Notes: generated by a model from the letters alone, not told the origin. A stretch of 64,000 nucleotides of DNA from IMGVR_UViG_3300048924_000100:62001-126000; one strand, 5' to 3'. Shown: positions 13,259-45,808, numbered from the stretch's first letter. Numbers and translations: made by a program.

Positions 13259-13914
13259 AAGGGGAATTCTGGGTAGTAGACGGTCTTGACGGTTCTGGCA
13301 AGACCGGGTTGATGGACAGGATAAAGACGTTTCTTACCGTCCACCGTATTCCATTTATCTGGTCACGCGAACCCGGCGGTACTCCGTTTGCGGAGATGTT
13401 GCGTGACGGCCTGAAGTTCGGTTTCCACGGGTTGGGGGATTACGAACTGTCGCCCATGACACAGACCATGCTGTTTAACGCAGCGCGTGTGGATCACATC
13501 GAAAAGGTGATCAAGCCGCACATGGCTCAAGGCAAGATCGTATTGTGTGATCGCTACAAGGATTCCACCTTTGCGTACCAGGGTGGTGCTGGCGGCATCA
13601 ACGCGTCCAAGCTTACAACGATCCATGACTTGGTCTGTGGATTCAACCCTGACATGGTCTTCATGATGGACGGCGATCCAAAGGTATTCGCTGAGCGCAT
13701 GGTAGGTCGTGGACAACCGGATAAACTGGATAAGCTCCAGTTGGAAAAGGCTGATGAGATGCGCGACGTTTACCAGTATCGGGCCAGCCTTGAGCCGGAC
13801 GTATACCGGGTGATTGACGCGACTCAGAGCGAAGAACAGGTCTGGGCTCAGGTTCTCCCCCATCTGATGGAGCGACTCAATCAGTTAAAGCAACGGCCTA
13901 AAGCTGAGGCCTGA
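13255..13914 (+). CDS. tmk: Thymidylate kinase
   Basis: DGLDGSGKT P-loop, REPGGT and LCDRYKDSTFAYQG. Confidence 0.95.
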   Translation: MKGEFWVVDGLDGSGKTGLMDRIKTFLTVHRIPFIWSREPGGTPFAEMLRDGLKFGFHGLGDYELSPMTQTMLFNAARVDHIEKVIKPHMAQGKIVLCDRYKDSTFAYQGGAGGINASKLTTIHDLVCGFNPDMVFMMDGDPKVFAERMVGRGQPDKLDKLQLEKADEMRDVYQYRASLEPDVYRVIDATQSEEQVWAQVLPHLMERLNQLKQRPKAEA

Positions 13915-13953
13915 CGGGCCGGATGTTATAGTCCAACACAAGAGATTAGGATT

Positions 13954-14142
13954 ATGACACCTGATGACGAAATGCGCCAACGGCTACACCTGGATGCTCT
14001 GGGGAAGGTCTATTCGACTGTACCACCAGAGCGTCAACCTTGGAGTCCTCAGGGGCTTAAGGAAGATCCAAACTTCGTAAAGCGTGCTGAACCGCCTAAG
14101 CAGTTTGGTTACGGCATGGAACTGAACCTACCGAAGAAATAG
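13954..14142 (+). CDS. Small hypothetical protein
   Basis: AGGA RBS; 62 aa. Confidence 0.5.
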   Translation: MTPDDEMRQRLHLDALGKVYSTVPPERQPWSPQGLKEDPNFVKRAEPPKQFGYGMELNLPKK

Positions 14143-14150
14143 GGAACGGT

Positions 14151-14762
14151 ATGAAACTCTACCATTACTCCGATAAGCATTACGATCAGCTACAAAGTCG
14201 TCGCGTGTCGGGGCTCCCAGTTCCTGAGGGCGTTCGGGTTTCTGATGACTACCTCGATCACATTTCGTTCTTCTTCGATCCGATCCCTTCCAAGCTGATG
14301 CCTCAGATCTTTGATAAGGGGCACCCGTTCTGGTACAAGGGTCACAAGCTTTACGAGTATGTGATCGACGTTGATGATCTGGAAGATGAGTTCAACTTCC
14401 GTGTCGTAGAAAGTGAACGTAAGACTGCGTTGCTGGATGAGTTCTCCAAAGAGCATGATTGGGAAAGTCACGACCCAAAGAAGCTTGCTCTGTGGAAAGC
14501 AGAACTGTTCAAGATGCAGAAGAAGCACGGTGAGATCGGTTTCAATAAAGCTGCCTTCAAGGCATTTCTGAAAACCCTGCCGCGTGACACTACACGATAC
14601 GGTTACCTGACTGCCAAGGCTAGGGATGATTTCGATTGGGGATACAACAAGTATGCAGCGAATGTCCCGCATGTCATGCTGTATCCGTCTACGGGCATCA
14701 TCCCGGTTAAAGAAGTGTTTGAGTTGACCATTGGTAGTGAACACCGCAAGAAAGTTGTTTAG
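14151..14762 (+). CDS. Hypothetical protein
   Basis: 203 aa ORF followed by a terminator. Confidence 0.7.
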   Translation: MKLYHYSDKHYDQLQSRRVSGLPVPEGVRVSDDYLDHISFFFDPIPSKLMPQIFDKGHPFWYKGHKLYEYVIDVDDLEDEFNFRVVESERKTALLDEFSKEHDWESHDPKKLALWKAELFKMQKKHGEIGFNKAAFKAFLKTLPRDTTRYGYLTAKARDDFDWGYNKYAANVPHVMLYPSTGIIPVKEVFELTIGSEHRKKVV

Positions 14763-14842: not shown

Positions 14843-14888
14843 TCATGTGATTAAGACAATTAAGTCTTTCATACTCCGGAGTAATACC

Positions 14889-15251
14889 ATGTCTCATTTC
14901 AACGCTGGCCAGTTCGACGAAATCGTAGAAGTTGTTAAAGCTAACAACGGCGTGATAGGTGACGACCACAACTGCGGTACCCGCACCATGACCATTGCTG
15001 GTCTGGGTATCTTCCGTAAGCCAGGTGTACAGAAAGGTATTGTGGTTCCTCTGTGCAGCAGCAAGGTGGGTTTCTGTCTGAACCACATGTACCTGGAAAA
15101 CGGTGAAGTTCGTGTCTCCCGCAACTCGGTGGGTGGCCTGATCGAAACCGGTAAACACGCCAACCTGCAAGCCGCAGTGGAAGCGTTCAACGCCGACCAA
15201 GAACACAACCAATGGTCCATGGGTGTTCTGGAACGTGTTGTATATCTGTAA
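14889..15251 (+). CDS. Hypothetical early protein
   Basis: GGAG RBS and ATG 14889; monocistronic between a promoter and a terminator. Confidence 0.7.
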   Translation: MSHFNAGQFDEIVEVVKANNGVIGDDHNCGTRTMTIAGLGIFRKPGVQKGIVVPLCSSKVGFCLNHMYLENGEVRVSRNSVGGLIETGKHANLQAAVEAFNADQEHNQWSMGVLERVVYL

Positions 15252-25917: not shown

Positions 25918-28900
25918 ATGGAAACAGTTGACAGTGACAACACGGCAAAAGACAGTACGTTAAAGTTTGCAAAAGAGTTGATGAACTACCTGGGTGCACA
26001 GAACCTCCCCAAGGAACTTATCGACGACCGCAAGAAACGAGTGGACTGGGAGAAGCGCACTGATGATGAGTTGGTCATGGCGCACTTCGACGAAGACAGC
26101 TTGTCCAAGATCAAGACGGTTCGTTTCCTCAAGGACTTTGCCCGCTACAAAGCACAGCCTGACCGTACTACCAAGAACACCAGCTTCTTGCGGACAGCAG
26201 AGATCTTCCGTCAGCAGGGGATCAAGAACTACTACTTCCTCCTGCAACTGAACAACCCGGCTTTGATCGGGGTAGACCCGTATGACGAGAACTTGACCAA
26301 CGAACAGAAGGTCATGATCATGCACGAATCGGAGACCAACTTCTGGTACTTCCTTCGTGAGGTGTGTAAGCTCCGGGCTGACCGTCAGTTCTTAGCGAAC
26401 CGGGGTAACATCAGTTTCATCTGGAACTACCTGAACCACATTACCCAGTACATGATCATGCCTCGTCAGCAGGGCAAGTATCAGGATGACAACAACAAGG
26501 TTCGTATCGCTACGGCTAACGGTAAGGTGAACGAGCCTAAGGACGCCTGGGTACGTATTGGTGACCTTAAAGCGGGTGATGAGGTTATCGACCGTTATGG
26601 CAAGAAGTGTACAGTTATCGGTATCCATCCTCAGGGTATCAAACGACTGTACCGGGTTTACGCCAGCGATGGTCGTTATGTGGACGCGGGCCCTGAGCAC
26701 CTCTGGACGCTGGCTGACCACAGCCGTAAGGTGAACGATGATCCGATCTGGGATGACTACACCACTGCAGAGATGATTGACAAGCTCAAGTCTGATGTGA
26801 TCCTTGAGTTTCCGTTGATCGAAGCCGAACAAGGGGTTGCTAAAACCCTGGCGATTGATCCGTATGTGATGGGTACCTTGATTGGTGGCCAACGTATCGG
26901 TGGGTTCATTCTGATCAAGAAGGTTTCTGAAGCGGCTGATGCTTGGATTGAAGAGAACCTGCCTGAAGGTCTTGAGCTGGTTAAGAAGGGCAATCGTCGT
27001 GAGATCCATTCGACAGACGAGAATGTCAAGATTACCTTCGATCCAGACATGGGTGTGCCGTCGCACTACCTGGAAGGTGCTCTGTCAGATCGCCTGGCGC
27101 TCCTACAAGCGTTTCTGGACCAAGGAGCCATCGGTGAGGAGGGTGTGGTCTACAACACCACTAGCAGGCTTGTAGGCGGTCATGTTCAATACCTGGCGCG
27201 TGGCTTGGGTGGTACTGCTTCCAAATCGAGTAACAAGATCACCGTAACCCTGCCGCATTCGATGGCGTTGTTTAAGTACAAGCATGTCGAGGACGAGTTC
27301 GTTTATCAGAACCAACTGTTTGTGGAACGCATCGAGTATCAGGGCGAAGCACCTTGCACCTGCATCGAGGTCGACAACGAGGATCACCTCTACGTCACTG
27401 ATGACTTCCTGGTCACTCACAACACCGTGTCGGTACAGGTTATTGCTTTCTGGCTGACGTACATCATGGGTCGGGGCTACAAGTCTCACCTGGTAACGCT
27501 GAAGTCGGATAACCGGGCTCAGTTCATTGACGCAATCAAGAAGATCCGAACGTGTCTGCCGAAGTACCTGGTTAACCCAACTTGGAAGGACAAGGATGCG
27601 GGTAACTACCTGACGTATAAAGCGTTTGGGGAGGAGCACGTGAACACCCTGACCATCTCAGTACCCCAGATGGGCGAAGACGCCGCAGGCGACCTTGGAC
27701 GGGGTCTCACGGTAGGTACCACGAACTACGACGAGCCAGGTTACATCAACTGGATCGAGGCGATCATCAACGGATGCTCTCCTTCTGCTTTGACAGAGAT
27801 GGAGATTTGTCGTGACAGCGGCATTCCTTACGGGATCAGTTATATCACGACACCGAATACGACCCTGCATCCAAGTGGTGCATTCATGTTCGAGAAGTTG
27901 ATGACATCGACCGAGTGGCGTGAGAAGTTCTTCGACTCGTACAGCGAAAGTCATCTGAAGATGCGCTTGCTTAAAGCCTCTCCGAAGAAGACCACCTCGC
28001 CTTCTGTGGCCCTTGTGTATAACTACCTGCAACTGGGTAAAGACAAGGCCTGGGTACGGGAGACTATCGACAGCCTCAACCTCAGCCTTGCTAAGGCGAA
28101 GATCGACTTGCTCCTCATGTGGGTTGAAGACGGTGAGAACCGTGTGTTCGACGACGTGACGCGTGAAGCGATTAACAACGTTAAGCGGGATAAGGTTTGG
28201 AGTAAGGAGTATCGTGACACGGGTCTGTTTATCGACTTCTTTGTCACGCAGCAAGAACTGCTAGAGATGGCGAAGAAGAGTTATAATGACTTCTTCCTCA
28301 TTGGGGTGGATACCTCGTCGGCTATCAACAAGGATGCCTGTACGCTGATCATCCGCAGTATCAAGACCGGTAAGGTCATTGGGGTGGGTCGTTATCAGTT
28401 GGCGTTCCTGGATGACGTGACGGGCATTATCGTCGACATGCTGACTACCTTCGAGAACAGCCTGTTGGTGATTGAGCGCAACTATGCTCACCACATGATC
28501 GACAACCTGCTGGTGATGCTGCCAGCTAAAGGGATGGATCCATTCACTCGAATCTACAACACGGTCTTCCAAGATCCTGTTAACCATTCGAAGGAATATG
28601 AGGCAGTTCAGAACACCAAGTTTGCTCACCGCAGTAAAAGCTTCTACCTGAAGTACAAACAGTTCTTCGGGTTCGTCACCACCCAGACATCGCGTCAAGT
28701 GCTGTACGGGCTGATTCAGGAAGCTGTGGGTAACACGGGGTATGGTCTGAACTACGACAGGCTTGCTGACGAGCTTATCAACCTCAAGACGCGGGGCGAT
28801 CGAATCGACCACGATAGCAAACAGCACGATGACTTGGTTATCGCCTGGTTGTTGACTTACTGGTTTATCAAGCTGGGGCAGAACAAGCCGATGTACGGGA

Positions 28901-29211
28901 TTCCTACCGGGATTGCGTTGTCGGAAACTCGTAACCTGCTGGACGCTGGTAAGAACCGCAATGCTCCTGAAGTCGATCCAAGTATTGTCTCGTTTATGGA
29001 CAACATCAGGAAGCGTGTACAGAAGCTTACAGATGAGTTGTTGAACACCAACGACAACATCCTGGCCATGCGACTGGAAGCCGAGATCAACAAGCTCAGC
29101 AAACTGCTTCCGGTTGAGACGGCTAAACTTCTTACCGTGGATACCTTAATCGAAACAGCTAAGCTTGAGCGTGCCAAGCGGATGCTCAGAGAACGTAAAC
29201 GTGCTGCGTAA
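25918..29211 (+). CDS. terL: Terminase large subunit (gp25-like) with intein
   Basis: Walker A PRQQGK|T split by an intein, Walker B NYDE, coupling motif ITTP, and nuclease motifs IGVDTS and HDDLVIAW. Confidence 0.9.
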   Translation: METVDSDNTAKDSTLKFAKELMNYLGAQNLPKELIDDRKKRVDWEKRTDDELVMAHFDEDSLSKIKTVRFLKDFARYKAQPDRTTKNTSFLRTAEIFRQQGIKNYYFLLQLNNPALIGVDPYDENLTNEQKVMIMHESETNFWYFLREVCKLRADRQFLANRGNISFIWNYLNHITQYMIMPRQQGKYQDDNNKVRIATANGKVNEPKDAWVRIGDLKAGDEVIDRYGKKCTVIGIHPQGIKRLYRVYASDGRYVDAGPEHLWTLADHSRKVNDDPIWDDYTTAEMIDKLKSDVILEFPLIEAEQGVAKTLAIDPYVMGTLIGGQRIGGFILIKKVSEAADAWIEENLPEGLELVKKGNRREIHSTDENVKITFDPDMGVPSHYLEGALSDRLALLQAFLDQGAIGEEGVVYNTTSRLVGGHVQYLARGLGGTASKSSNKITVTLPHSMALFKYKHVEDEFVYQNQLFVERIEYQGEAPCTCIEVDNEDHLYVTDDFLVTHNTVSVQVIAFWLTYIMGRGYKSHLVTLKSDNRAQFIDAIKKIRTCLPKYLVNPTWKDKDAGNYLTYKAFGEEHVNTLTISVPQMGEDAAGDLGRGLTVGTTNYDEPGYINWIEAIINGCSPSALTEMEICRDSGIPYGISYITTPNTTLHPSGAFMFEKLMTSTEWREKFFDSYSESHLKMRLLKASPKKTTSPSVALVYNYLQLGKDKAWVRETIDSLNLSLAKAKIDLLLMWVEDGENRVFDDVTREAINNVKRDKVWSKEYRDTGLFIDFFVTQQELLEMAKKSYNDFFLIGVDTSSAINKDACTLIIRSIKTGKVIGVGRYQLAFLDDVTGIIVDMLTTFENSLLVIERNYAHHMIDNLLVMLPAKGMDPFTRIYNTVFQDPVNHSKEYEAVQNTKFAHRSKSFYLKYKQFFGFVTTQTSRQVLYGLIQEAVGNTGYGLNYDRLADELINLKTRGDRIDHDSKQHDDLVIAWLLTYWFIKLGQNKPMYGIPTGIALSETRNLLDAGKNRNAPEVDPSIVSFMDNIRKRVQKLTDELLNTNDNILAMRLEAEINKLSKLLPVETAKLLTVDTLIETAKLERAKRMLRERKRAA
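26479..27423 (+). mobile_element. Class 3 intein (315 aa) with LAGLIDADG-like endonuclease remnant in terL
   Basis: Inserted at GK|T. Block B GPEHLW, block F CTCIEV, and C-terminus LVTHN followed by Thr+1. Confidence 0.9.
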
Positions 29212-31011: not shown

Positions 31012-32394
31012 TTACTCAAAGTAGTCCTTGCTCAGGATACGCAGCACGATGTAGAGACACAGTGCCGTGCGTACCAGTTGCACGGTTTGCTGGGTTTTTA
31101 CCCCAGTTTGTTCTTTGACGATTTCGTCACCAAGGGTTCGAATAACCTTGACGGTATCGTTCTTGCTTCGAGGGGCGCCGTAGGCGCCGCGCATCTTGAT
31201 CAAGACGTCGTACACGTTAGTTTTCTTAATACCATTGGTGTGCAGGTATTCAAACATGTGCTGGAGAACGGCATCCGCAAACTGTTTGTATTCCGGCTTC
31301 TTCGGGTTGTTGTACAGCTTCGGAAACTGCTGAATCACGTACGCCAACTTGTCACGGGGAGTACCCTCTAGGGCATCCGCTGAGTACTTGATCAGCTCGT
31401 CTTTGTAGAACGAGGTGTCCTCGGTGAGGATGCGATCAAGGTAGAGACCATACTGGGTGATCTCTTTGGTCTGAGACTTCAGCGCCAACTCATCGCCAAG
31501 GTTAACCTTTGCACCGTCGATACGCACGATGTTGGTTTTGTTCTTGACGTCGTGAAAGACTTTGTTGATGTCGTTAATCGCCCGACGCAAACGGTTCTGG
31601 ATATCCCCGACCATGTAGACGATTTTCTTGTCGTCATCCATTTTGCTGAAAGCGTCGTAGTGGATACCCGTCTTCGGGTTGATGATGAACTCAGCCCGAG
31701 CCTCGATCAGCATCCGCCAGCTACCGTAACGCTTGATGTCGTATTTCAGACTCAGGCGGTTGTAGGTTTCCAGCACCACTTCTTTCCGTGCCATAAACGG
31801 ATAGTCGTTGTGGATGATCGAAGTCAAACACTTGTAGTGGTACATCGACAGGATATCGATCAGGGCCTGGTGTTTGGTATCCTTGCTCAGGCTTGAACGG
31901 TTAACCCGGTACAGCAGGTAGGGAATGGTCAGGTTGAAGGTATCGCCCACAACACTCCATTCCTTGTTCACCGCTTTGGCTGCGTGCAGGTTTTCCTTGA
32001 GTTCCTCTTCGTCAACGTCGAAGATCTCAGAGAACCACTGGTTACGGTCAGCCGTGGTGAAGGTGATCTTGTGCAAACCGAGATACGGAGAACCAAAGAA
32101 CTCCATATGGCTGACCACGCCCACACTTCGAGTTACGAACGAGTAGACGTAGCGACGCAGCACCTTGGCCCACTTCTCATCAACAACCAGGAAGTCACCA
32201 AACTTGTTGCAGATGTCCAGGATGGCGTGGTTACTGTCGAAGTCAATGCCCGACAGCAACGCCTCAGTACCCGTAACCGATTGGATCTCATGCGGATCCA
32301 TCGGAAACAGATACAGCCCATCTTTGGCCAGGATTGAGTGATCTTCCATGCCTTCAAACAAACTGAAGATCGACGGTTCAAGAAACGATGTCAT
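31012..32394 (-). CDS. Conserved phiKZ-like protein (probable virion component)
   Basis: 460 aa; N-terminal GME and GTE fit the S/A/G-X-E prohead-protease sites. Confidence 0.6.
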   Translation of the reverse strand: MTSFLEPSIFSLFEGMEDHSILAKDGLYLFPMDPHEIQSVTGTEALLSGIDFDSNHAILDICNKFGDFLVVDEKWAKVLRRYVYSFVTRSVGVVSHMEFFGSPYLGLHKITFTTADRNQWFSEIFDVDEEELKENLHAAKAVNKEWSVVGDTFNLTIPYLLYRVNRSSLSKDTKHQALIDILSMYHYKCLTSIIHNDYPFMARKEVVLETYNRLSLKYDIKRYGSWRMLIEARAEFIINPKTGIHYDAFSKMDDDKKIVYMVGDIQNRLRRAINDINKVFHDVKNKTNIVRIDGAKVNLGDELALKSQTKEITQYGLYLDRILTEDTSFYKDELIKYSADALEGTPRDKLAYVIQQFPKLYNNPKKPEYKQFADAVLQHMFEYLHTNGIKKTNVYDVLIKMRGAYGAPRSKNDTVKVIRTLGDEIVKEQTGVKTQQTVQLVRTALCLYIVLRILSKDYFE

Positions 32395-33239
32395 CAGAAT
32401 CTCCTTGGTACGGAACGACGAACGGCGTCGGTTACCCGCTGACGGTCACTGTAGGCCATCCGCTTGGTCCATTCACCGGTGAGGTATTCGTGGTAATCTT
32501 TCCAGGCATCACGATACTCCATGATGTCATCCTTGATGTCGCTCAAGGAAACACCGCTACGGATAATCGCTTCCTGGGTAGGGCGACGGCAGGAACGGTA
32601 GATGTATGCCTTGACTGCCAGTTCTACCAGATGAGCAAAGTGTTCGTGTTGGCGCGTCGAAATACTGCTCAGGCCTTCATCGAACTCCAGGATCATCTTG
32701 GCTGACATCGAGTAAGTACCCGAGTTCAAACCAAAGATCACAAAGCAGTTGTTACCCGTCATGTGGATGTTGTTGTAGGTCACCGGCATCTGACGGTTAG
32801 AACTGAGGCTGTCGATCAGCGCCTCGGTCATGTCCGTGATAGAACCCTGACCACACATGTCGTTGGTGTTGGTACTCATCCCCAACATACCCGTCGACGA
32901 AGTCATCGAACCCAGGTAGATCTCGGTTACCGAAATGATCTTGCGACCACCGGTGACGATATCGGGTACGTTCACTTCAATGCAGGCGTTACCCAAGTCG
33001 CGGATACGCGCTCCGCTCAGATCGATCAACTCGGTCTTACCGCCGTTGGCATTACAAGCCGGCAGTACCGTACGGTGAATCACTTTTTCGCGAATGCCTT
33101 GTTCCACTGTGGTGTGGTTAACGAGGTTGTACCAGTTGCCTGCGAAGTTACCGTTGGGTGATTCGAAAGCCAACTTCAAGAGGTAATCGTCGATGTCACA
33201 ATTGGTGACCCGATTGATGGCGTAATCCACCGCGTTCAT
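32394..33239 (-). CDS. Conserved phiKZ-like virion/hypothetical protein
   Basis: 281 aa; GGAG RBS; translationally coupled to the next gene. Confidence 0.65.
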   Translation of the reverse strand: MNAVDYAINRVTNCDIDDYLLKLAFESPNGNFAGNWYNLVNHTTVEQGIREKVIHRTVLPACNANGGKTELIDLSGARIRDLGNACIEVNVPDIVTGGRKIISVTEIYLGSMTSSTGMLGMSTNTNDMCGQGSITDMTEALIDSLSSNRQMPVTYNNIHMTGNNCFVIFGLNSGTYSMSAKMILEFDEGLSSISTRQHEHFAHLVELAVKAYIYRSCRRPTQEAIIRSGVSLSDIKDDIMEYRDAWKDYHEYLTGEWTKRMAYSDRQRVTDAVRRSVPRRF

Positions 33240-33630
33240 AATCTGGTACTCCTGAGAGACGGTGTAAATAAATTGGGTTAAGAGGGGTCATAGCATCCTG
33301 CTTCGACCTTCTGAGTCGAAAGGTACCGACCCTCTAAAAACGTCTCAGAGAAACGGTTCTCCAAAACTAGTACCGTAGGGTACCTGACATACAGAAAACC
33401 GCTAGGATCGTTTCCTAGACAGCTTAGAACGGATCCTGAGAGGGGTGATTGAGGTGAATAGAAACCCTCACTCAGACTCTCATAATTAAATTGCATTCTA
33501 CCTATATATTCTATTTGAGATCTGCCGCCGGGCCGGGAGCGGGGTGTTTAAATTTCTTGTTTTTAAAGTTCCTTCGGAAACTCTGTTAAGTTTTTTGTTT
33601 TTCCAATTGGCTAATTTCAAGAAAAACTAT

Positions 33631-33774
33631 TCCCTTCTGTTTACCTCGCGCACACGCGCTCCGTGCGCTAAAGAACCTAATATATATTTATATATATTTA
33701 TTCTTTATTGCTCTTTTAAAGCTTTTAAAAGCAAAGAAACGCCTGCACGCACACGCACGAGGTATACAGAGGGA
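33631..33774. repeat. Imperfect inverted repeat enclosing an AT-rich core and palindromes
   Basis: TCCCTTCTGTTTACCTCG ... CGAGGTATACAGAGGGA enclosing CGCACACGC x2, (TATATATTTA)x2 and GCTTTTAAAAGC. Confidence 0.7.
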
Positions 33775-33780
33775 TGGAGT

Positions 33781-33801
33781 ATTTCAAACCTAAATTATTA
33801 C
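33781..33801 (+). promoter_or_regulatory. Early promoter variant
   Basis: ATTTCAAACCTAAATTATTAC resembles the other six copies. Confidence 0.6.
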
Positions 33802-33865
33802 TTTGTCACCTAGGAAACCATATTCTAGAAAAACGAATTGCGAAACACATGAGGAGTTAAGATCC

Positions 33866-34429
33866 ATGACGACTGTAGCCTGGAACGGCAAGAAACTGGT
33901 AACGGATTCGCAAGTGTCGCTGGGGACGACGGCGAACCCTGGACCGGTCAAAAAGATTTTCGAACCTGAGGAAGGTGAGTATTGGGAGTGCTACGGCACC
34001 AAGGTCGTGGCATTCGGCATCTCGGGGGATGGCAAAGCAATTGGCTTCATGCGCGATCGACTGCGGGAAGGGATTAGCCACCGTACGCGTTTCGATGACA
34101 TCGAGGAAGTATCGTTCGGCGCGCTGGTGATTACCGAGGACGGCAACTGCTACCGCTGGCAGACCAACAAACGGAATGGCCGGCCACAGCACCAAGACCT
34201 GTTGCAACTCATGCCACCTTGCACCGTCGGTTCTGGTCACGCCTATGCCTTGGGGGTCATGTGGATTGGCAAGGACATCGAGACTGCTGTGAAGGCTGCG
34301 ATCAAACTGGACAAGTGGTCAGGTGGAGACTTACAAATCTGGGAACTTCCACCTAAGCCGGACGTCAAGTCTGTTCGTCCCGTCGCACCAACCGCACAAA
34401 CACAAGTGGCCGAAACACCAGCCGCCTAA
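33866..34429 (+). CDS. HslV/proteasome-beta-like Ntn hydrolase, copy 1
   Basis: GAGGAG RBS puts the start at M-TTVAWNG (N-terminal Thr). Also has TDSQ, KKIF, GISG, GSG and D..SGG. Confidence 0.8.
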   Translation: MTTVAWNGKKLVTDSQVSLGTTANPGPVKKIFEPEEGEYWECYGTKVVAFGISGDGKAIGFMRDRLREGISHRTRFDDIEEVSFGALVITEDGNCYRWQTNKRNGRPQHQDLLQLMPPCTVGSGHAYALGVMWIGKDIETAVKAAIKLDKWSGGDLQIWELPPKPDVKSVRPVAPTAQTQVAETPAA

Positions 34430-34443
34430 CCTGGAATAAATCT

Positions 34444-35040
34444 ATGAGCACCATAGCGTTCGACGGAAAACAACTGGTCACGGACTCGTCGGTTTCGATT
34501 GACGAGACGATCAGCCAAACCCAGTTCCGCAAGATCTTTACACCGATTGACGATAACGAGTACTGGGAGATCAACGGTGTACGGGCGTTGGCGTTCGCAG
34601 CTTTCTCGCTACCGATCATCAACCTGGAACTTCGCAAAGCTTTGCAGAAGGGATTGAACGAAGGGGACGACTCAAGCTGCTTCAGCGAAAACTTTGACGC
34701 GATCGTTATCGACGAGACAGGTCTGGCTTACCAGATTGTGGCGGTTTGGGTGGCGTATGGGGACGATCGAAAGCTTCGCATCAGCTTCATCCCGACTACT
34801 GGCATCGTCGCAATTGGGACGGGTGATCAATACGCACTGGCAGTGATGGCTGTGGGTAAATCTGCTCGGTCGGCGATCAAGGCAGCAATTGCCCTGAACG
34901 TTGATTCGGCCGGTAACCTGCAAAGCTTCGAAGTTCCACCGAAACCTGAAACACCATCGAAGCGCCCTCCGGCGGACACCACTACTGAAGCTGGCAAGTG
35001 GATCGACGTCGGTCAGCTGGATCCGGTTGTCAAGTTGTAA
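34444..35040 (+). CDS. HslV/proteasome-beta-like paralog, copy 2 (degenerate)
   Basis: M-STIAFDG, TDSS, RKIF, GTG and N..SAG; clearly homologous to copy 1. Confidence 0.75.
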   Translation: MSTIAFDGKQLVTDSSVSIDETISQTQFRKIFTPIDDNEYWEINGVRALAFAAFSLPIINLELRKALQKGLNEGDDSSCFSENFDAIVIDETGLAYQIVAVWVAYGDDRKLRISFIPTTGIVAIGTGDQYALAVMAVGKSARSAIKAAIALNVDSAGNLQSFEVPPKPETPSKRPPADTTTEAGKWIDVGQLDPVVKL

Positions 35041-35054
35041 ATCTCCTATGCTAT

Positions 35055-35280
35055 GTGAACTCGTGAGTTTGCTCCTGCTTGAAGATAGTTAGCCCTGGCG
35101 TCCCCGTGGGAATAGTTTGGAGTCCCTACCCACATCAGTCAGTCGTCCCCCATTAACGATTGGCTGTCCCGGCAAAGCATCGCTGGGAAAAGCTCCACCT
35201 GCCAACTTAGTCTCATCGTGTCCGGACATCCCACTGTGGTGTCCGGATGCGGTGGGATTATTTCGCATTTTGTTTTTTGT
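35055..35280 (+). ncRNA. Candidate structured non-coding RNA
   Basis: No credible ORF. It starts at a TATG late-promoter-like motif and ends in a ~23-bp G-U-rich hairpin plus T tract. Confidence 0.4.
35208..35280 (+). terminator. Long-stem terminator
   Basis: 35208-35230 pairs with 35238-35260 using several G-U pairs, followed by T tracts. Confidence 0.7.
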
Positions 35281-35424
35281 TACCGGATGGATATATTTTA
35301 TACTTGCACACGTCTTTCGGTTTTTCTCATAGCTGGGTTTTCCGATGATGTGGATTGGAGGTGGGTCCTACTGTCCTTCGGTTAGCAGGTGCTTCTCTCA
35401 CAGGTGCAGCCTTTCTGAGGACAT

Positions 35425-35484
35425 CCCCTGTTGCGGAGTTTCTTGGGCATGCCAAGCACTCTACTTGCGACAGGGGTTATTTTT
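35425..35484 (+). terminator. Intrinsic terminator
   Basis: CCCCTGTTGC ... GCGACAGGGG plus TTATTTTT. Confidence 0.65.
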
Positions 35485-35540
35485 CATCTGTGGATAGATT
35501 CTTGGGCGATGTAGGCAATGGGTTGAAGTCATGTAAAAAG

Positions 35541-35558
35541 ATTTCAAGCCTACATTAC
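35541..35558 (+). promoter_or_regulatory. Early promoter of phuZ
   Basis: ATTTCAAGCCTACATTAC. Confidence 0.7.
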
Positions 35559-35622
35559 TAACACGTTGACCCAATTGGTCTAACGAATTCTTTCAACTGG
35601 TAACTCAAAGAGAACATTTCAC

Positions 35623-36621
35623 ATGAATGCAAATACTTCGGATCTGGCATACTTCCTCTGCGGTGGTACCGGTATTAACATCGGCGTGGCTCTGAAAAAG
35701 GGTACTCACACCGACAACAACAAAAACGCTTTCTTCGTCGGTCTGGATTCCTCGGATCGTAACAGCTCCGGCGACTTGTTCGAAGTTGTGCAGATGGCCG
35801 TTGCCAACGACCCTGACCAGAAGGCCAAGGGTTCGGGTAAAGTCAAAGCAACCAACTACCCACAAGCTGAACAGTTCATCAACCAGTTCCTGACCAAGCA
35901 CAAGCCACGTGATTACAACATCATCGTCTGCTCCACCGGCGGTGGTACTGGTTCGATGCTGGCTTTCGTTCTGGCGCGCATGCTGTTCGAACGCGATCAA
36001 CTGGTCGTGCTGTGCTTCATCAACGACAAGACCTCGCAGGTTGAAGAGATCAACGTCGTGAACAGCTACCGTTCGTACGCGTCGCTGACCACTCCTGGTT
36101 CGCTGAACCGCGTGGTTCCGTACATGGAGTTCGACAACACCCTGACCAACACTCGTGGTGAAGTCAACCAAATGGTCATCGACAAGCTCGATGTGGCCAG
36201 CCTGTTCCTGAGCAACGTCAACAAGGAACAAGACCACACTGACATGAAGAACCTGCTGAACTTCAGCAAGCACTACGGCGTTCCACCGTCCATGTCGCGT
36301 ATTCGCTTCTACGACGAGAAAGGTGTTGCAGACTTCAAGGGCAAGGTGCCGGTTGCAGTCTCTTCCCTGTTCGAAAGCAGCGATGCAGTCATCCCACGTT
36401 TCAACGGCACCGTGATCCGTTCCACCGGCGTGTTCGCTGACGGCGTTAAGCGTCCAAGCAACGCCCAGGAACTGCACATGGTCCTGGACCACGGCGAAGC
36501 TCTGAAAGAGCTGGAGAAACACATCGAAGCAATGGAAACCCGCAAGGTTGAAACTTCGTCGACCTTCACCCAGCAGAAAGATCTCTCTGCCGGTGCGGAT
36601 GACAAAGGCTTCTTCATGTAA
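35623..36621 (+). CDS. phuZ: Phage tubulin PhuZ
   Basis: CGGTGINIG and the GGGTGS tubulin signature; D..D..N T7 loop; acidic C-terminal tail (ADDKGFFM). Confidence 0.95.
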   Translation: MNANTSDLAYFLCGGTGINIGVALKKGTHTDNNKNAFFVGLDSSDRNSSGDLFEVVQMAVANDPDQKAKGSGKVKATNYPQAEQFINQFLTKHKPRDYNIIVCSTGGGTGSMLAFVLARMLFERDQLVVLCFINDKTSQVEEINVVNSYRSYASLTTPGSLNRVVPYMEFDNTLTNTRGEVNQMVIDKLDVASLFLSNVNKEQDHTDMKNLLNFSKHYGVPPSMSRIRFYDEKGVADFKGKVPVAVSSLFESSDAVIPRFNGTVIRSTGVFADGVKRPSNAQELHMVLDHGEALKELEKHIEAMETRKVETSSTFTQQKDLSAGADDKGFFM

Positions 36622-39446: not shown

Positions 39447-41531
39447 ATGACTGCCGCAGCTAAACACACATCTCCTTTCCTAGCAGAGGAGTATATACCC
39501 AATCGTAACTTGCTCCAGAACTACCACTACATGGCCGCCGCTTATTTGACGGCTCTTTACAAGTGGGACTACAACACAGTACTGGAGTTGGTAGAGAAAG
39601 TATTTGTACCCAACCAGAACGGCTTTAAGGAAGCCAAGTTCAGAGTCTTTAAGAAGAACAAGTACGGCGACCGTGTTCCTGACATCATGCCGGCTCGTGA
39701 GTTCTTCCAGACAGTTCAGGATAATAACTGGCACCTGTCTCCGTCGTTTGTGGCTTACACGCACACCAACCAAGAACAGTCGATCAACTCGATTGGTACT
39801 GAAACCTTTATCGAATTCCGTCGCCTTTATAAAGGCAAGATGAAAGAAGCTATTTCGTCTGGCGATAAAGAAGCTGCACAAGCGTTTGATGAAATCCAGA
39901 AGGCCCTGAAGATCTTTAACAACGCCCAGTCTGGTGCGATGTCGTCTTCCGGTACTCCGCTGATGAACAAGTCGGGTCACACTACTCTGACCTCTATCTG
40001 CCGTTCCCTGACCTCCGTCGCCAACCTGATGAACGAGCGACTGATTACGGGTAACCGGTTGCTACTCAGTTACAACAAGTCCATGGAACTGTTTATCAGT
40101 ACCCTGGCGTTTGCTAAGCGGGACAAGATCCAGGCGGTAATCGACAAGTACGAAATGAGTTACGCCACCGTAGACCAGGTCATGGACATGGTGAAACGTT
40201 GCGCGTCGTACTACTGGAGCAACCCGACCCAGATCGCAGCTATCCGTACCTTTATGGAAATGCTGTCACCTCTGGAGCTGACAATCATCCTCTGCACCAT
40301 GGACCTCCGTGGGCTGTACACCACCAACCAAGCACTGATCAAACGGTTCTTCGATGAATGGTGCAAAGTTCCTGAGATGCCAACGTCGTTTGAAAACGTT
40401 ACTACCATCAAGGCAGCTAACGACGACTACAAGACACTCTGCACTACCAAGCTGGGCAAAGGGGCGACGGCAGATCAGACCGCGTATCTCAACGCTTACC
40501 ACGTCAGCCTGGAAGTTAAATGGCGAGACTTCATTGAAGCTTTCTTGAAAGCCGATATCCCGCCGTCTGGTGTATTCAGCGTTAAGGAGTTGGTACGTGA
40601 GAACGTTGTAACCTCCGACACTGACTCGATGATCTATTCGGTAGACGCCATCATTGATGACTACATTACCGATAAGAAAGACGAGCTGGCATTTAACGGG
40701 GTACTGACGTACTTCATTCGTTGCATTGCCGTAGACCAGCATGCGCGTCTTAGCACCAACATGAACGTGGCTAAGAAGTTCCGTTATCGTCTGAACATGA
40801 AGAACGAATACCTCTTCAGTTCGTACGTGACTACTTCGATGTCCAAGCACTACTATGCGTTGCAGTTGATGCTGGAGGGTATTCTCTACGATAACCCTAA
40901 ACTGGAACTCAAGGGCGTGCACCTCAGGGGGATCAAGATCGCACTCAAGGTCCGGGAGTTCACGAACAAGCTGATGCGCGATGTGTTGAATGCCATTTAC
41001 ACCAACCAGCAACTGGATGCTCCAGAGTTGTTAAAAGGTGTGGGTGATTTGGAACGCGCTCTGTTTGAAGAACTGGAGAAGGGTGGTTGGAGCTGGTTGA
41101 CCAAGAACGGAATCAAAGAAGAGACGGCCTACAGCAACGCTGATTCGTCGATCTACTTCTACCACGAGATGTGGAAGCAGGTGTTCGCCGATACCTATGG
41201 CGACGCACCAGAGCTGCCGTACCGTGCGTATAAGGTCAACGTTACACTGGACAACAAGACCAAGGTCAAGAAGTTTACTGAGACCTACGGGGAAAGCGAT
41301 GTGGTCAAGAAGATGATGGCTTACATTGAGGCGCGTGGATCGCTAACCTCCGTGTATGTTCCGATTGACATGATCGAATCGATTGGTGGTATCCCGAAAG
41401 AGATCCTACCGATTGTGGATACACGCTTGCTTATTGCACAGAACTTCAAGTCCATCTACGCCATTCTGGAATCCTTGGGCTTGTACATCATGAACAGCAA
41501 GGTAACTCGTCTGGTATCTGACGAGCATTAA
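39447..41531 (+). CDS. Family B DNA polymerase, polymerase subunit (phiKZ gp50-like)
   Basis: Motif B QKALKIFNNAQSG, motif C SDTDSMIY, plus KHYY and ELKGV. Confidence 0.85.
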   Translation: MTAAAKHTSPFLAEEYIPNRNLLQNYHYMAAAYLTALYKWDYNTVLELVEKVFVPNQNGFKEAKFRVFKKNKYGDRVPDIMPAREFFQTVQDNNWHLSPSFVAYTHTNQEQSINSIGTETFIEFRRLYKGKMKEAISSGDKEAAQAFDEIQKALKIFNNAQSGAMSSSGTPLMNKSGHTTLTSICRSLTSVANLMNERLITGNRLLLSYNKSMELFISTLAFAKRDKIQAVIDKYEMSYATVDQVMDMVKRCASYYWSNPTQIAAIRTFMEMLSPLELTIILCTMDLRGLYTTNQALIKRFFDEWCKVPEMPTSFENVTTIKAANDDYKTLCTTKLGKGATADQTAYLNAYHVSLEVKWRDFIEAFLKADIPPSGVFSVKELVRENVVTSDTDSMIYSVDAIIDDYITDKKDELAFNGVLTYFIRCIAVDQHARLSTNMNVAKKFRYRLNMKNEYLFSSYVTTSMSKHYYALQLMLEGILYDNPKLELKGVHLRGIKIALKVREFTNKLMRDVLNAIYTNQQLDAPELLKGVGDLERALFEELEKGGWSWLTKNGIKEETAYSNADSSIYFYHEMWKQVFADTYGDAPELPYRAYKVNVTLDNKTKVKKFTETYGESDVVKKMMAYIEARGSLTSVYVPIDMIESIGGIPKEILPIVDTRLLIAQNFKSIYAILESLGLYIMNSKVTRLVSDEH

Positions 41532-43789: not shown

Positions 43790-45808
43790 ATGAGTCTGAA
43801 TAACGGTTCCGAAAGCACCTCCTGGAACGAAAACAACGAAAAGCCGAACTCCAATCAGGCTCCAGGCGCCTCGGGCACCATGGCTCCTCTGGACGGTCTG
43901 GCTGGTCTGCTGCGTCTGCCGTCGATGACGAGCGATAACCGCAACCTGAAAGAGGTTAGCGAAACCATCGAGAAACTCGAGGCGATCTACGAGAACGCCA
44001 AGAAATCCACCACCAACGAACTCCAGCGCAAAATCGTTCCGACGGTTGAAATGCTGACTCCGTCCATCTCGGCTCAACTGCCAGGTGTCGGCCTGTACGT
44101 CGTCTTCGACGGCACCATGTACGTGATGGCTGCTCTGTTCTACAACCGCACGCTGAGCATCGGCGTAGAGCGCATCACCGTCAACACCAACAACATCGTC
44201 CAGCAGATGTCCGCGCCACTGACTCCAGCTCAGTACCCGAACAGCCTGTTCCTGGAAAAGCTGACCTCGCACTACACCAAGGTTGCCGAAGCCCTGGGCG
44301 TGAAGAACGTCAGCGTGATCAACATGATCGTTTGCGATCTGGAAATGCTGCACCACGCAGAAGCCGGCGATCCGAAAGACTACGCCCACCGTCAGGCGAA
44401 CTACATCGCCTCCGAGTGGGAAGAAGCGATCATGGTCAAGACCGTGCGCGAAATCGTGGGCAAGGGCTACCAAGTTCCGGTTCCGTTCGCTACTCCTGAT
44501 CAGCCGTACGGCAAAGATGGCTGCGCCGAAGCTCGCGTTAACGCAATCGCTTTCCGCACCAGCAAGGCCGGCACTCTGACTCCGGACAACATGGAAGTTA
44601 TTGTTAGCACCATCAACAATAACAACCAGAACACCGGCAACTTCCAGGCCAACTCGAAAGAGCTGATCCGGGTTACTGGTGCGGTCAGCCTGAACGGCGT
44701 GTCGTGGGAAGATCACCAGCGTTTCATGATGTCGCACCGCTCGCAAGAGCAAATGAACTCGCTGCAACAGTTCCTCGGCAACAGCATGGGCATGGGCGCA
44801 TACCCACAAGGCTTCAAGCCACTGCGTCCAGTTATCACCATCGGCACCGTGCAAGCTGGTGAGCAACTGTGCAACAACGGCGGCCTGTTCCCGTTCTTCA
44901 GCGGCCTGTACGCGCTGATGGCGACGAACAACCAGTACGTCTGGTCTGAAGCTCTGCGTCGTCACTCGGTAGGTGCTCGTGGTAACCTGGCCGACCTGGA
45001 AACTCGTGTTGATCAAATGGTCAGCCAGATCCCAGGCGGTTTCCAGAACCCACAACGCATCCGCCTCGACGAGAAGAAGATGTCGGACACCGAGCTGGTT
45101 AACAACTGGATTCGCCAGAACGTTAGCCCGCACGCAACCTTCCAGATCAACCTGATCCCGGCAGGTCCGAACGCGTCCATCAACAACTTCTTCTTCCAGC
45201 TGGCCAAGGTCGGTCAGAACGCCGCTGAAATCAAGGTAGTCATCGCTCTGATCGACTCCATGACCAAAGGCGCGTTCTCGGAAGTGATCCGCGGCAACGT
45301 TACCTCGCAACAAGGTTGGGTGCCTTCCAAGCCAGTGCTGATCCCGACTGGCATGATCGCAGTCAACGGCATGGCTGAATACGCCGGCAAGAAGTTCAAC
45401 ACCCAGGAACTGGACGAGATGATGATCTCGCACATCAAGGGCCCGAAAGGTCAGCTCGCAGCCGAAAGCCTGCTGTCGACCATGTACGGCACCATCCCGG
45501 GTGAGGAATTTAAACAGCGGGCACAAAAGCTGCGCGTGGAAACCTCGTCGTCGCTGTTCGACGGTCAGGTTCACATCAACGGCTGGGCTCAGCCTCACAT
45601 CTGGGCGCCTGACTTCATGGCCGCCATGTCGAAAGCCATGGACACCATCGGTCAGCTGAACGTTGCCAACAACCTGGGCAGCTGGCGCAACACCAGCCTG
45701 GCTTCGACGCCTGGCATCGGTCTGGCTACCCTCGTGGGCGCTGGTTCGAACAACGCGACCGGCAACGGTCTCGGTGTTGCATACAACATGAACATGCCAT
45801 TCATGTAA
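43790..45808 (+). CDS. chmA: Chimallin, major phage nuclear shell protein
   Basis: 672 aa with extreme codon bias, its own early promoter and terminator, and flexible termini. It lies directly upstream of nvRNAP beta'N, the phiKZ gp54 position. Confidence 0.85.
   Translation: MSLNNGSESTSWNENNEKPNSNQAPGASGTMAPLDGLAGLLRLPSMTSDNRNLKEVSETIEKLEAIYENAKKSTTNELQRKIVPTVEMLTPSISAQLPGVGLYVVFDGTMYVMAALFYNRTLSIGVERITVNTNNIVQQMSAPLTPAQYPNSLFLEKLTSHYTKVAEALGVKNVSVINMIVCDLEMLHHAEAGDPKDYAHRQANYIASEWEEAIMVKTVREIVGKGYQVPVPFATPDQPYGKDGCAEARVNAIAFRTSKAGTLTPDNMEVIVSTINNNNQNTGNFQANSKELIRVTGAVSLNGVSWEDHQRFMMSHRSQEQMNSLQQFLGNSMGMGAYPQGFKPLRPVITIGTVQAGEQLCNNGGLFPFFSGLYALMATNNQYVWSEALRRHSVGARGNLADLETRVDQMVSQIPGGFQNPQRIRLDEKKMSDTELVNNWIRQNVSPHATFQINLIPAGPNASINNFFFQLAKVGQNAAEIKVVIALIDSMTKGAFSEVIRGNVTSQQGWVPSKPVLIPTGMIAVNGMAEYAGKKFNTQELDEMMISHIKGPKGQLAAESLLSTMYGTIPGEEFKQRAQKLRVETSSSLFDGQVHINGWAQPHIWAPDFMAAMSKAMDTIGQLNVANNLGSWRNTSLASTPGIGLATLVGAGSNNATGNGLGVAYNMNMPFM

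What the first reader, a model, noticed from the sequence alone, without database searches (positions are those of the whole stretch)
33545..33780. Candidate replication origin or DNA-unwinding element
Seen: the most AT-rich part of the window, between divergent transcription units. An imperfect inverted repeat (TCCCTTCTGTTTACCTCG / CGAGGTATACAGAGGGA) brackets two CGCACACGC direct repeats, a (TATATATTTA)x2 core and the palindrome GCTTTTAAAAGC. Known: binding sites flanking an AT-rich core is the usual origin layout; I know of no defined origin for phiKZ-like phages. Inference: an origin, a packaging site or a shell-anchoring site.
Basis: partly seen in the sequence, partly recalled or inferred. 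Interest (0 to 1): 0.6.

Follow-up and report, generated by a model that had tools for sequence, protein, structure and literature searches.

The report
Candidate replication origin, jumbo phage
A single-copy, conserved, hairpin-prone AT-rich DNA element lies at the easiest-to-melt spot of a nucleus-forming jumbo phage genome, right beside an early promoter; it is a credible but unproven candidate for the unknown replication start site of these phages.

Summary
The window is part of a 214-kb EL-like chimallivirus that encodes PhuZ and the ChmA shell protein. The element (33631-33774) lies in a 626-bp gap between a leftward structural operon and a rightward operon of two HslV-like genes and PhuZ.

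- **Composition:** its core has the lowest GC in the whole genome at 60, 200 and 300 bp. It is also the least stable 50-bp duplex.
- **Copy number and conservation:** it is single copy and occurs in 8 distinct variants in relatives. Invariant blocks persist where the neighbouring protein is only 67% identical.
- **Structure:** the AT palindrome keeps perfect symmetry through three different arm versions. In the most distant variant the core is replaced by other palindromes.
- **Promoter:** a canonical early-promoter motif (33781-33800) starts 6 bp after the right arm and points away from the element.
- **Synteny:** in five complete genomes of the clade the same gap holds a genome-wide GC minimum, although the cores are not homologous.

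I found no iterons, no initiator gene, no skew switch and no promoter pointing into the core. A close complete relative lacks the element. Read data could not be obtained.

Best reading, at about 0.35: a supercoil-driven DNA-unwinding element and candidate origin. The main rivals are promoter-upstream regulation and a structured RNA.

The parts
33286..33298 (-). Candidate late promoter box of the leftward operon. It reads GGATGCTATGACC on the minus strand and contains TATG, about 50 nt upstream of the DUF7484 start codon.
   Evidence: The block is conserved in all three gap types, including phage EL. TATG is the phiKZ late-promoter core (PMC7598289). Genome-wide TATG enrichment upstream of genes is not strand-specific, so this is tentative.
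33300..33500 (.). Conserved non-coding stretch with several hairpins. It may be a structured RNA or leader; the strand is unknown.
   Evidence: RNAalifold finds hairpins on either strand, and 8 pairs keep pairing through double changes. The 72-aa ORF here changes frame in relatives.
33501..33519 (+). Block CCTATATATTCTATTTGAG. It lies where type-B relatives carry a canonical early promoter, but it does not fit the promoter matrix.
   Evidence: Near-invariant in six of the seven aligned type-A variants (identical in five, three differences in L009) and absent in L016/L027. The matrix score is only 1.5. It is unique in the genome. The type-B promoter is seen.
33524..33544 (+). G+C-rich hairpin-prone box containing G runs, followed by a T-rich tract.
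   Evidence: Read from the sequence. Relatives carry a GGGGGTAA-type box at the corresponding place in all gap types.
33546..33630 (+). T-rich spacer with two copies of a T-rich 17-mer (33548-33564 and 33586-33602) and the mini-hairpin TTCCTTCGGAA (33569-33579).
   Evidence: Repeat family D3. The mini-hairpin is conserved in all type-A variants, including L016/L027.
33631..33648 (.). Left arm of the inverted repeat. Its outer part, TTCCCTTC, is conserved in seven of the eight variants, with one change in L023.
   Evidence: Only the outer 6-9 bp stay complementary to the right arm in every variant.
33647..33659 (.). Left alternating purine-pyrimidine (CG/CA) tract, which includes the direct repeat CGCACACGC.
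   Evidence: The tract is 13-23 nt long in the variants and always alternating.
33654..33678 (.). 25-nt block ACGCGCTCCGTGCGCTAAAGAACCT, invariant in all 8 variants. It contains a short GC hairpin.
   Evidence: The motif AAAGAACCTA occurs nowhere else in the genome.
33669..33707 (.). AT core: a nested imperfect palindrome TAAAGAA ... TTCTTTA around the perfect palindrome AATATATAT-TT-ATATATATT (33679-33698).
   Evidence: Three different arm versions occur in relatives and each is perfectly symmetric. This is the genome-wide GC and stability minimum.
33721..33732 (.). Second palindrome, GCTTTTAAAAGC.
   Evidence: Relatives have one extra A, so the sequence is conserved more strictly than the symmetry.
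33744..33759 (.). Right alternating purine-pyrimidine tract, which includes the second CGCACACGC.
   Evidence: It is kept as an alternating tract in the variants aligned, and is much shorter in L016.
33758..33774 (.). Right arm CGAGGTATACAGAGGGA. The consensus across all 8 variants is CGAGGTAWACAGWRGG.
33781..33800 (+). Canonical early-promoter motif (virion RNA polymerase type), ATTTCAAACCTAAATTATTA. It points rightward, 66 nt upstream of the HslV-like start codon.
   Evidence: Matrix score 26.4. It is one of about 21 sites scoring above 21, all on the plus strand and clearly separated from background. The same motif is annotated 'putative phage promoter' in the EL record. It is conserved in all variants.
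33866..34429 (+). First of two HslV-family peptidase-like genes. It opens the rightward operon that leads to PhuZ.
   Evidence: phrog_1040, E = 1.7e-28.
32394..33239 (-). DUF7484 gene, the first gene of the leftward structural operon.
   Evidence: PF24302, E = 8e-82, and phrog_3179.

Best explanation
The element is a single-copy, cis-acting DNA element that works through DNA structure.

**Anatomy.**
- An extremely AT-rich palindromic core is the easiest place in the genome to melt.
- The core is clamped by alternating CG/CA tracts, a conserved 25-nt box and a short terminal inverted repeat.
- The whole sits between a leftward late operon and a rightward early promoter.

**Proposed mechanism (inferred, not shown).**
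1. Transcription leaving in both directions loads the gap with negative supercoils.
2. The AT palindrome melts or extrudes as a hairpin, and the alternating tracts can also absorb torsion.
3. The opened DNA gives the phage replication machinery an entry point. The conserved boxes may be bound by an unidentified phage protein. A transcript may be processed into a primer, since these phages have no primase.

On this reading the element is the candidate replication initiation zone of this subgroup of EL-like chimalliviruses.

**Shown versus inferred.** The anatomy, uniqueness, conservation, structure-forming potential and position are shown. The link to replication is inferred.
For: 1. **Melting.** The core is the unique GC minimum of the 214-kb genome at 60, 200 and 300 bp, and its least stable 50-bp duplex.
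2. **Position across the clade.**
   - In five complete genomes the syntenic DUF7484/HslV gap ranks first for low GC at 200 bp. These are the window's own genome, EL, and one type-B and two type-C metagenomic relatives.
   - It also ranks first at 60 bp in four of the five, although the AT cores are not alignable between gap types.
   - This argues for selection on composition at this position, as expected of an unwinding element and not of an RNA.
3. **Single copy.** The element occurs once in the genome.
4. **Sequence conservation.**
   - There are eight distinct variants.
   - The element is 82% identical to L009, where the adjacent HslV-like protein is 48% identical.
   - Invariant boxes persist in L016/L027, where DUF7484 is 67% and PhuZ 48% identical.
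5. **Structure is selected.**
   - The AT palindrome has three arm versions, each perfectly symmetric.
   - In L016 the core is replaced by three unrelated palindromes while the flanking boxes stay.
   - Folding z-scores are -4.6 to -8.3.
6. **Setting.**
   - The element lies between divergent units, and a canonical early promoter starts 6 bp beyond the right arm and points away. This is the geometry that produces negative supercoiling.
   - The DNA polymerase gene lies 5.7 kb to the right.
7. **Literature.** Chimalliviruses lack a dedicated primase, RNA-DNA hybrids have been proposed as initiation sites, and an RNase H-clamp protein is required for replication (PMC13648698). I found no paper defining an origin.
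Against: - There is no direct evidence of replication.
- There are no iterons. Only two-copy short repeats were found.
- No initiator-like gene lies nearby, and the genome has no herpes-type origin-binding protein.
- Cumulative GC skew and third-codon-position skew show no switch here.
- The only recognisable promoter points away from the core, so a T4-, T7- or ColE1-type primed origin is not demonstrated.
- A complete relative (G001) with 83-97% identical flanking genes lacks the element anywhere in its genome. It has a different, less AT-rich gap with only a simple hairpin. A sole essential origin would not be expected to be swapped so easily.
- EL-type gaps are only weakly structured, with z from -1 to -4.
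- AT-rich minima elsewhere in this genome mostly coincide with early promoters. Proximity to a promoter could therefore explain part of the composition.
- Joad, from another genus, shows no comparable single minimum.
Confidence: 0.35

Rival explanations
1. The element is an upstream regulatory module of the early promoter at 33781-33800, or an insulator for the divergent promoter pair. The conserved boxes would be binding sites for a phage transcription factor or architectural protein. Alternatively, the structure-prone DNA makes promoter output depend on supercoiling, timing expression of the HslV-like/PhuZ operon.
For: - The right arm is always 6-10 bp upstream of the promoter motif.
- Five other early promoters carry a partly similar upstream box, TTTAAGATACA.
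- Most AT-rich minima of this genome coincide with early promoters.
- The gap is replaced as a module in type-B relatives, where the early promoter sits about 270 nt upstream of the gene. That pattern fits an accessory regulatory region.
Against: - None of the other roughly 20 early promoters has such an element.
- The AT core is separated from the promoter by 45-200 bp and by GC-rich hairpins in all gap types. In the other promoters the AT-rich zone overlaps the promoter itself.
- Spacing between the right arm and the promoter varies by 3 nt.
- This reading does not explain why this locus is a GC minimum of the whole genome in every complete genome examined.
Confidence: 0.25
2. The element is transcribed and works as a structured RNA. 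It could be part of a long leader of the HslV-like/PhuZ operon, starting near 33501-33519, or a leftward antisense or non-coding RNA. In either case a long closing stem encloses two or three hairpins.
For: - The fold is very strong and the architecture is conserved in all eight variants, including L016 with its different core.
- The minus-strand fold is more stable than the plus-strand fold in all seven variants folded on both strands, because the alternating tracts pair through G-U (minus-strand folds of all eight).
- A T run follows the closing stem on the minus strand in 7 of 8 variants.
- Type-B relatives keep a simple hairpin at the same place, downstream of their early promoter. Its top is fully compensatory and it has G-U pairs on the plus strand.
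- The neighbouring 33300-33520 stretch also looks like structured RNA.
Against: - No Rfam family matches.
- No promoter of the known class points into the element from either side.
- The strand signals conflict: minus in type A, plus in type B.
- A perfect palindrome with a 2-nt centre and an extreme A+U content is atypical for a stable RNA.
- An RNA role does not predict that non-homologous cores would mark a GC minimum of each genome.
- The variants are too similar for a rigorous covariation test. Only 7 of 46 pairs show a double change.
Confidence: 0.2
3. The element is a packaging recognition site (pac), where the terminase makes its first cut on concatemers.
For: - It is a unique conserved site about 4.4 kb downstream of the large terminase gene (25918-29211).
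- AT-rich, bendable DNA flanked by conserved boxes resembles some pac sites. This comparison rests on my own knowledge of phage SPP1, not on a tool result.
Against: - It is not inside or next to a terminase gene.
- No terminal repeat or end of the assembly maps here.
- A close complete relative whose nearby genes are about 90% identical lacks the element.
- No read-end data could be obtained.
Confidence: 0.06
4. The element has no function of its own. It would be a recombination scar or a self-propagating palindrome in a promoter-rich gap.
For: - The gap is mosaic: whole-gap replacement in type B and core replacement in L016.
- Alternating dinucleotide tracts vary in length as slippage would produce.
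- Palindromes can keep their symmetry by template switching, without selection.
Against: - A 25-nt block and the right arm are invariant across relatives whose proteins are 48-67% identical.
- The element is as conserved as the structural genes and more conserved than the adjacent coding genes.
- The position is conserved as a genome-wide GC minimum.
Confidence: 0.05

Closest known systems
Herpes simplex virus oriS/oriL (palindromic origins). Compared from my own knowledge, not from a tool result.
   Same: An AT-rich palindromic centre is flanked by conserved boxes in inverted orientation. The total size is about 140-150 bp. The element lies between divergently transcribed genes, and the DNA polymerase gene is nearby.
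   Different: No homologue of the UL9 origin-binding protein is present. The arms are only 6-9 bp complementary in all variants. There are no repeated binding boxes, and no replication data exist. This is an analogy of layout, not homology.
Transcription-primed origins: T4 oriF/oriG, the T7 primary origin and ColE1. Compared from my own knowledge; the chimallivirus context comes from PMC13648698.
   Same: A promoter lies next to an AT-rich unwinding region. The phage family lacks a primase and needs an RNase H protein for replication. A conserved, structured non-coding stretch and a G-rich box lie beside the core.
   Different: In those origins the promoter fires into the unwinding region. Here the only recognisable promoter fires away from it. 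No R-loop or primer RNA has been shown.
Initiator and iteron origins (lambda ori, oriC, theta plasmids)
   Same: An AT-rich unwinding element lies in a long intergenic gap.
   Different: There are no iterons, no adjacent initiator gene and no skew switch.
Early promoters of RNA-polymerase-encoding jumbo phages (virion RNA polymerase type; PMC7598289)
   Same: The motif at 33781-33800 is a regular member of this genome's set of about 21 sites. It matches the motif annotated in the EL record.
   Different: The flagged element itself (33631-33774) does not contain the motif; its best matrix score is 2.7 on the plus strand and 6.7 on the minus strand. No other early promoter has such an upstream element.

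Membership tests
Replication origin with initiator binding sites (lambda ori / oriC type) | AT-rich DNA-unwinding element | tested here: met
   The core is the genome-wide GC minimum at 60, 200 and 300 bp, and the least stable 50-bp duplex.
Replication origin with initiator binding sites (lambda ori / oriC type) | Three or more repeated initiator binding sites (iterons or boxes) | tested here: not met
   Only two-copy repeats of 8-17 nt were found in 33200-33900.
Replication origin with initiator binding sites (lambda ori / oriC type) | Initiator gene adjacent to or overlapping the origin | tested here: not met
   The neighbours are DUF7484, phrog_2921, HslV-like genes and PhuZ. No initiator family was hit.
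Replication origin with initiator binding sites (lambda ori / oriC type) | Strand-composition switch at the origin | tested here: not met
   There is no inflection in cumulative GC skew. Third-position skew follows gene strand only. This test is weakly informative for phages.
Replication origin (any type) | Replication actually starts here (copy-number peak, nascent strands, autonomous replication) | not testable with these tools
Transcription-primed origin (T4 oriF/G, T7, ColE1) | Promoter firing into the unwinding region | tested here: inconclusive
   No early-type motif points into the core, and the one adjacent site points away. Middle and late promoters of these phages cannot be predicted from sequence (PMC7598289).
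Herpesvirus-type palindromic origin | AT-rich palindromic centre between inverted boxes, between divergent promoters | tested here: met
   Complementarity of the boxes is limited to 6-9 bp in some variants.
Herpesvirus-type palindromic origin | Origin-binding protein of the UL9 family encoded by the virus | tested here: not met
   PF02399 has no match in the genome.
Described RNA families (Rfam 15) | Match to a covariance model | tested here: not met
   There were no matches at E <= 1 in 32000-36000 on either strand.
Intrinsic terminator of this phage | GC-rich hairpin directly followed by a T run (here typically TTTATTTTTT) | tested here: not met
   The terminator scan finds none within 33545-33780. 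All 12 TTTATTTTTT copies lie elsewhere.
Miniature inverted-repeat mobile element | Multiple copies and target-site duplication | tested here: not met
   The element is single copy in the genome and the sequences flanking the arms are not duplicated. It is absent anywhere in four other complete genomes.
Jumbo-phage early promoter | Match to the genome's conserved AT-rich motif upstream of a plus-strand gene | tested here: not met
   The flagged interval scores at most 6.7. The true site lies just outside it at 33781-33800, with score 26.4.

The most novel reading that the evidence does not exclude
This would be the first identifiable replication origin of a nucleus-forming jumbo phage. It would be an initiator-less (or unknown-initiator) origin with a palindromic layout like that of herpesvirus origins. 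Divergent phage transcription would melt it, and a phage transcript from the adjacent conserved structured region would prime it, trimmed by the RNase H-clamp protein. That would explain how these phages replicate without a primase.
Probability: 0.25. Interest if true: 0.85.

Novelty: new variant of a known kind. Interest (0 to 1): 0.6.

Why it matters
How chimalliviruses start DNA replication inside their protein nucleus is an open question. No origin and no primase are known, and R-loop priming has only been proposed.

This element turns the question into a testable one. It is a single, conserved, structure-prone site at a global stability minimum. Its position is conserved across a clade while its sequence is not. 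It can be deleted or swapped with the Cas13-based engineering already used for these phages. It can also be examined by early-infection copy-number profiling, transcript-end mapping and structural probing.

If it is instead regulatory or an RNA, it would be the first conserved non-coding control element described upstream of the PhuZ operon.

Tried and rejected
- **Skew.** Cumulative GC skew and third-position skew by gene strand show no positional signal.
- **Known RNAs.** There were no tRNA, tmRNA or Rfam hits.
- **Host-type signals.** The sigma-70 and terminator scans found nothing inside the element.
- **Coding.** The 89-, 72- and 40-aa ORFs in the gap shift frame in relatives, and their protein identity is lower than the nucleotide identity.
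- **Extra promoters.** Neither the block at 33501-33519 nor AAAGAACCTA inside the element fits the early-promoter matrix or recurs elsewhere.
- **Shared motif.** A CTTTATTGCT-like motif among AT-rich gaps did not form a family.
- **Late promoters.** The upstream regions of the 19 minus-strand blocks share no clear motif, and TATG enrichment is symmetric between strands.
- **Mobile element.** It is single copy with no target duplication.
- **Identity with Serratia phage PCH45**, which would have brought in published transposon data. I rejected this on genome length and gene order.
- **Herpes-type origin-binding protein.** None is present.
- **Generality beyond the EL-like clade.** Erwinia phage Joad has no single dominant AT minimum, and the gap upstream of its PhuZ has ordinary GC content.
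- **Isolate phages.** No phage in the phage collection shares the element; only the coding flank matches.

Full report
**Where the window comes from.** The window is bases 62001-126000 of a single 214,198-bp virus contig with 51.1% G+C. It encodes a PhuZ tubulin (35623-36621), a nuclear shell protein (43790-45808), a DNA polymerase (39510-41531), a large terminase (25918-29211) and a tail sheath. It is therefore a nucleus-forming jumbo phage (chimallivirus). By DNA its nearest named relatives are Pseudomonas phage EL and Erwinia phages Joad and RisingSun. They match at about 70% identity, and only in coding sequence. It is not Serratia phage PCH45, which differs in length and gene order.

**The observation.**
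The observation check gives exact coordinates.
- The stretch lies in a 626-bp gap (33240-33865). On the left is a four-gene minus-strand block that starts with a DUF7484 gene. On the right is a plus-strand block that opens with two HslV-family peptidase-like genes followed by PhuZ.
- The core has the lowest G+C in the whole genome at window sizes of 60, 200 and 300 bp. It is also the least stable 50-bp duplex.
- As a single strand the element folds far better than dinucleotide shuffles (z = -6.6 with DNA parameters; z = -4.6 to -8.3 with RNA parameters). The fold is a long closing stem around two or three hairpins.
- The perfect palindrome AATATATAT-TT-ATATATATT is the only all-AT palindrome of that size in the genome; the other loci with such palindromes are G+C-rich, mostly terminator hairpins.
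- Two of the genome's 13 alternating purine-pyrimidine runs of 13 nt or more flank the core.
- The element is single copy.

- K-mer enrichment in intergenic DNA gave a motif, TTTCAAACCTAYATTAY.
- A position matrix built from it finds about 21 sites scoring above 21, all on the plus strand and clearly separated from background. They lie upstream of PhuZ, the shell protein gene and other plus-strand genes.
- This is the kind of conserved AT-rich motif that marks early promoters read by the virion RNA polymerase in these phages (PMC7598289). The EL record annotates the same motif as a putative phage promoter.
- One such site, with score 26.4, lies at 33781-33800. It starts 6 bp beyond the right arm and points away from the element.
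- Nothing inside the element fits the matrix.
- A block containing TATG on the minus strand (33286-33298) is conserved in every relative. It may be the late promoter of the leftward operon, but the genome-wide statistics for TATG are not strand-specific.

**Conservation.**
- Thirteen viral contigs keep the DUF7484/HslV arrangement, with gaps of 456-660 bp.
- Pattern scans of viral and metagenomic contigs brought the number of distinct variants of the element to eight.
- Against L009 the element is 82% identical over 174 nt, while the adjacent HslV-like protein is 48% identical. Along the pairwise identity profile the element matches the structural genes and exceeds the genes on its right.
- In L016/L027, DUF7484 is 67% and PhuZ 48% identical. 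The outer left arm, a 25-nt box, the right arm and the promoter are still unchanged there. The AT core, however, is replaced by three unrelated palindromes.
- Within the other variants the AT palindrome exists in three arm versions, each perfectly symmetric.
- The alternating tracts vary in length (13-23 nt on the left, shorter on the right in L016) but stay alternating.
- The ORFs in the gap are not conserved in frame.

**Three gap types.**
- Type A carries the element.
- Type B (L007, L008/L011) has flanks that are 83-99% identical to the window, but the whole stretch 33300-33800 is replaced. The element is absent anywhere in the complete 224-kb type-B genome.
- Where type A has the element, type B has a simple hairpin. 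Its top is fully compensatory between L007 and L008. It lies downstream of a canonical early promoter that sits about 270 nt before the gene.
- Type C (EL, L012/L013, L015) has a hairpin, an AT-rich stretch of 60-170 bp, a second hairpin, a conserved box and then the early promoter. Its sequence is unrelated to type A.

**The key comparative result.** I fetched four further complete genomes: EL, one of type B and two of type C. In all five genomes this syntenic gap ranks first for low G+C at 200 bp. It ranks first at 60 bp in four of them. The cores are not homologous between types, so what is conserved is extreme AT-richness at this position. In Joad, which belongs to another genus and has a different gene order, there is no single dominant minimum.

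**Interpretation.**
- Three findings point to a function carried by DNA structure and composition: position-specific AT-richness, uniqueness, and palindromes kept through compensatory change and even through replacement of the sequence.
- The setting between outward-firing transcription units is one that concentrates negative supercoiling. That would melt or extrude the core.
- These are the expected properties of a DNA-unwinding element. A replication initiation zone is the most economical role for a unique site of this kind.
- This fits a virus family with no known origin and no primase, for which RNA-DNA hybrids have been proposed as initiation sites (PMC13648698). My searches found no paper that defines an origin.
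- The layout resembles herpesvirus palindromic origins, but only as an analogy. No UL9-family protein is encoded.

**Why confidence is only about 0.35.**
- No replication evidence could be obtained.
- There are no iterons and no initiator gene, and no skew signal.
- The only recognisable promoter fires away from the core.
- A close relative lacks the element.

**Rivals.**
- *Promoter-upstream regulation.* This fits the fixed adjacency to the early promoter and the modular replacement of the gap. It does not fit the uniqueness among about 21 promoters, the distance of the core from the promoter, or the global minimum.
- *Structured RNA.* This fits the strong, conserved fold, the G-U-dependent pairing of the alternating tracts on the minus strand and the type-B hairpin. 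However, the strand signals conflict, no promoter is seen, and an RNA does not predict composition conservation across non-homologous cores.
- *Packaging site or non-functional scar.* Both are less likely.

**Verdict.** The origin reading is plausible and has been made sharper, but it is unproven. Whatever its role, the element is a genuine, conserved, previously undescribed cis element. It is a good experimental handle on how these phages start replication or control their early PhuZ operon.

Noticed in passing
window 9494, 14825, 33781, 35541, 43686, 52794, 57813 (and about 14 more in the rest of the genome): There is a set of about 21 sites with the motif TTTCAAACCTAYATTAY, all on the plus strand, 50-100 nt upstream of genes that include PhuZ and the nuclear shell protein. 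This is probably the early-promoter set of this phage. Five of the sites also carry an upstream box, TTTAAGATACA.
   Followed up: yes
window 33300-33520: This conserved non-coding stretch has several hairpins and some compensatory changes. EL-type relatives have a different covarying hairpin flanked by G runs at the same place. It may be a non-coding RNA or a long leader; the strand is unknown.
   Followed up: partly
window 33286-33298: The block GGTCATAGCATCC (TATG on the minus strand) is conserved in all gap types, including EL. It lies about 50 nt upstream of the DUF7484 start codon and is a candidate late promoter.
   Followed up: partly
window 33866-35040: Two tandem paralogous HslV-like genes evolve much faster than all their neighbours. 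They are 50-70% identical at the nucleotide level to relatives whose flanking genes are 85-97% identical.
   Followed up: no
window 35041-35622: The 582-bp 'gap' between the second HslV-like gene and PhuZ is 85-90% conserved in close relatives. It may hold unannotated small genes or an RNA.
   Followed up: no
window 25918-29211: The large terminase ORF is 1097 aa, but terminase family matches cover only roughly the first 520 residues. This suggests an insertion or a fused extra domain.
   Followed up: no
whole genome; in the window e.g. 12265, 15290, 15851, 25885, 48244: The intrinsic terminators are very uniform: a GC-rich hairpin followed by TTTATTTTTT. There are 12 exact copies, all intergenic and all on the plus strand.
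   Followed up: yes
window 14865-14891 and genome 31179-31205: A 27-nt exact repeat that ends in a start codon lies just downstream of two early promoters. The two genes therefore share a leader and translation start.
   Followed up: no
L096 (Erwinia phage Joad record 13734-14388): Joad has a 655-bp divergent gap upstream of its PhuZ gene. Its G+C content is ordinary and it is not an AT minimum, so the AT-minimum rule does not extend to that genus.
   Followed up: partly
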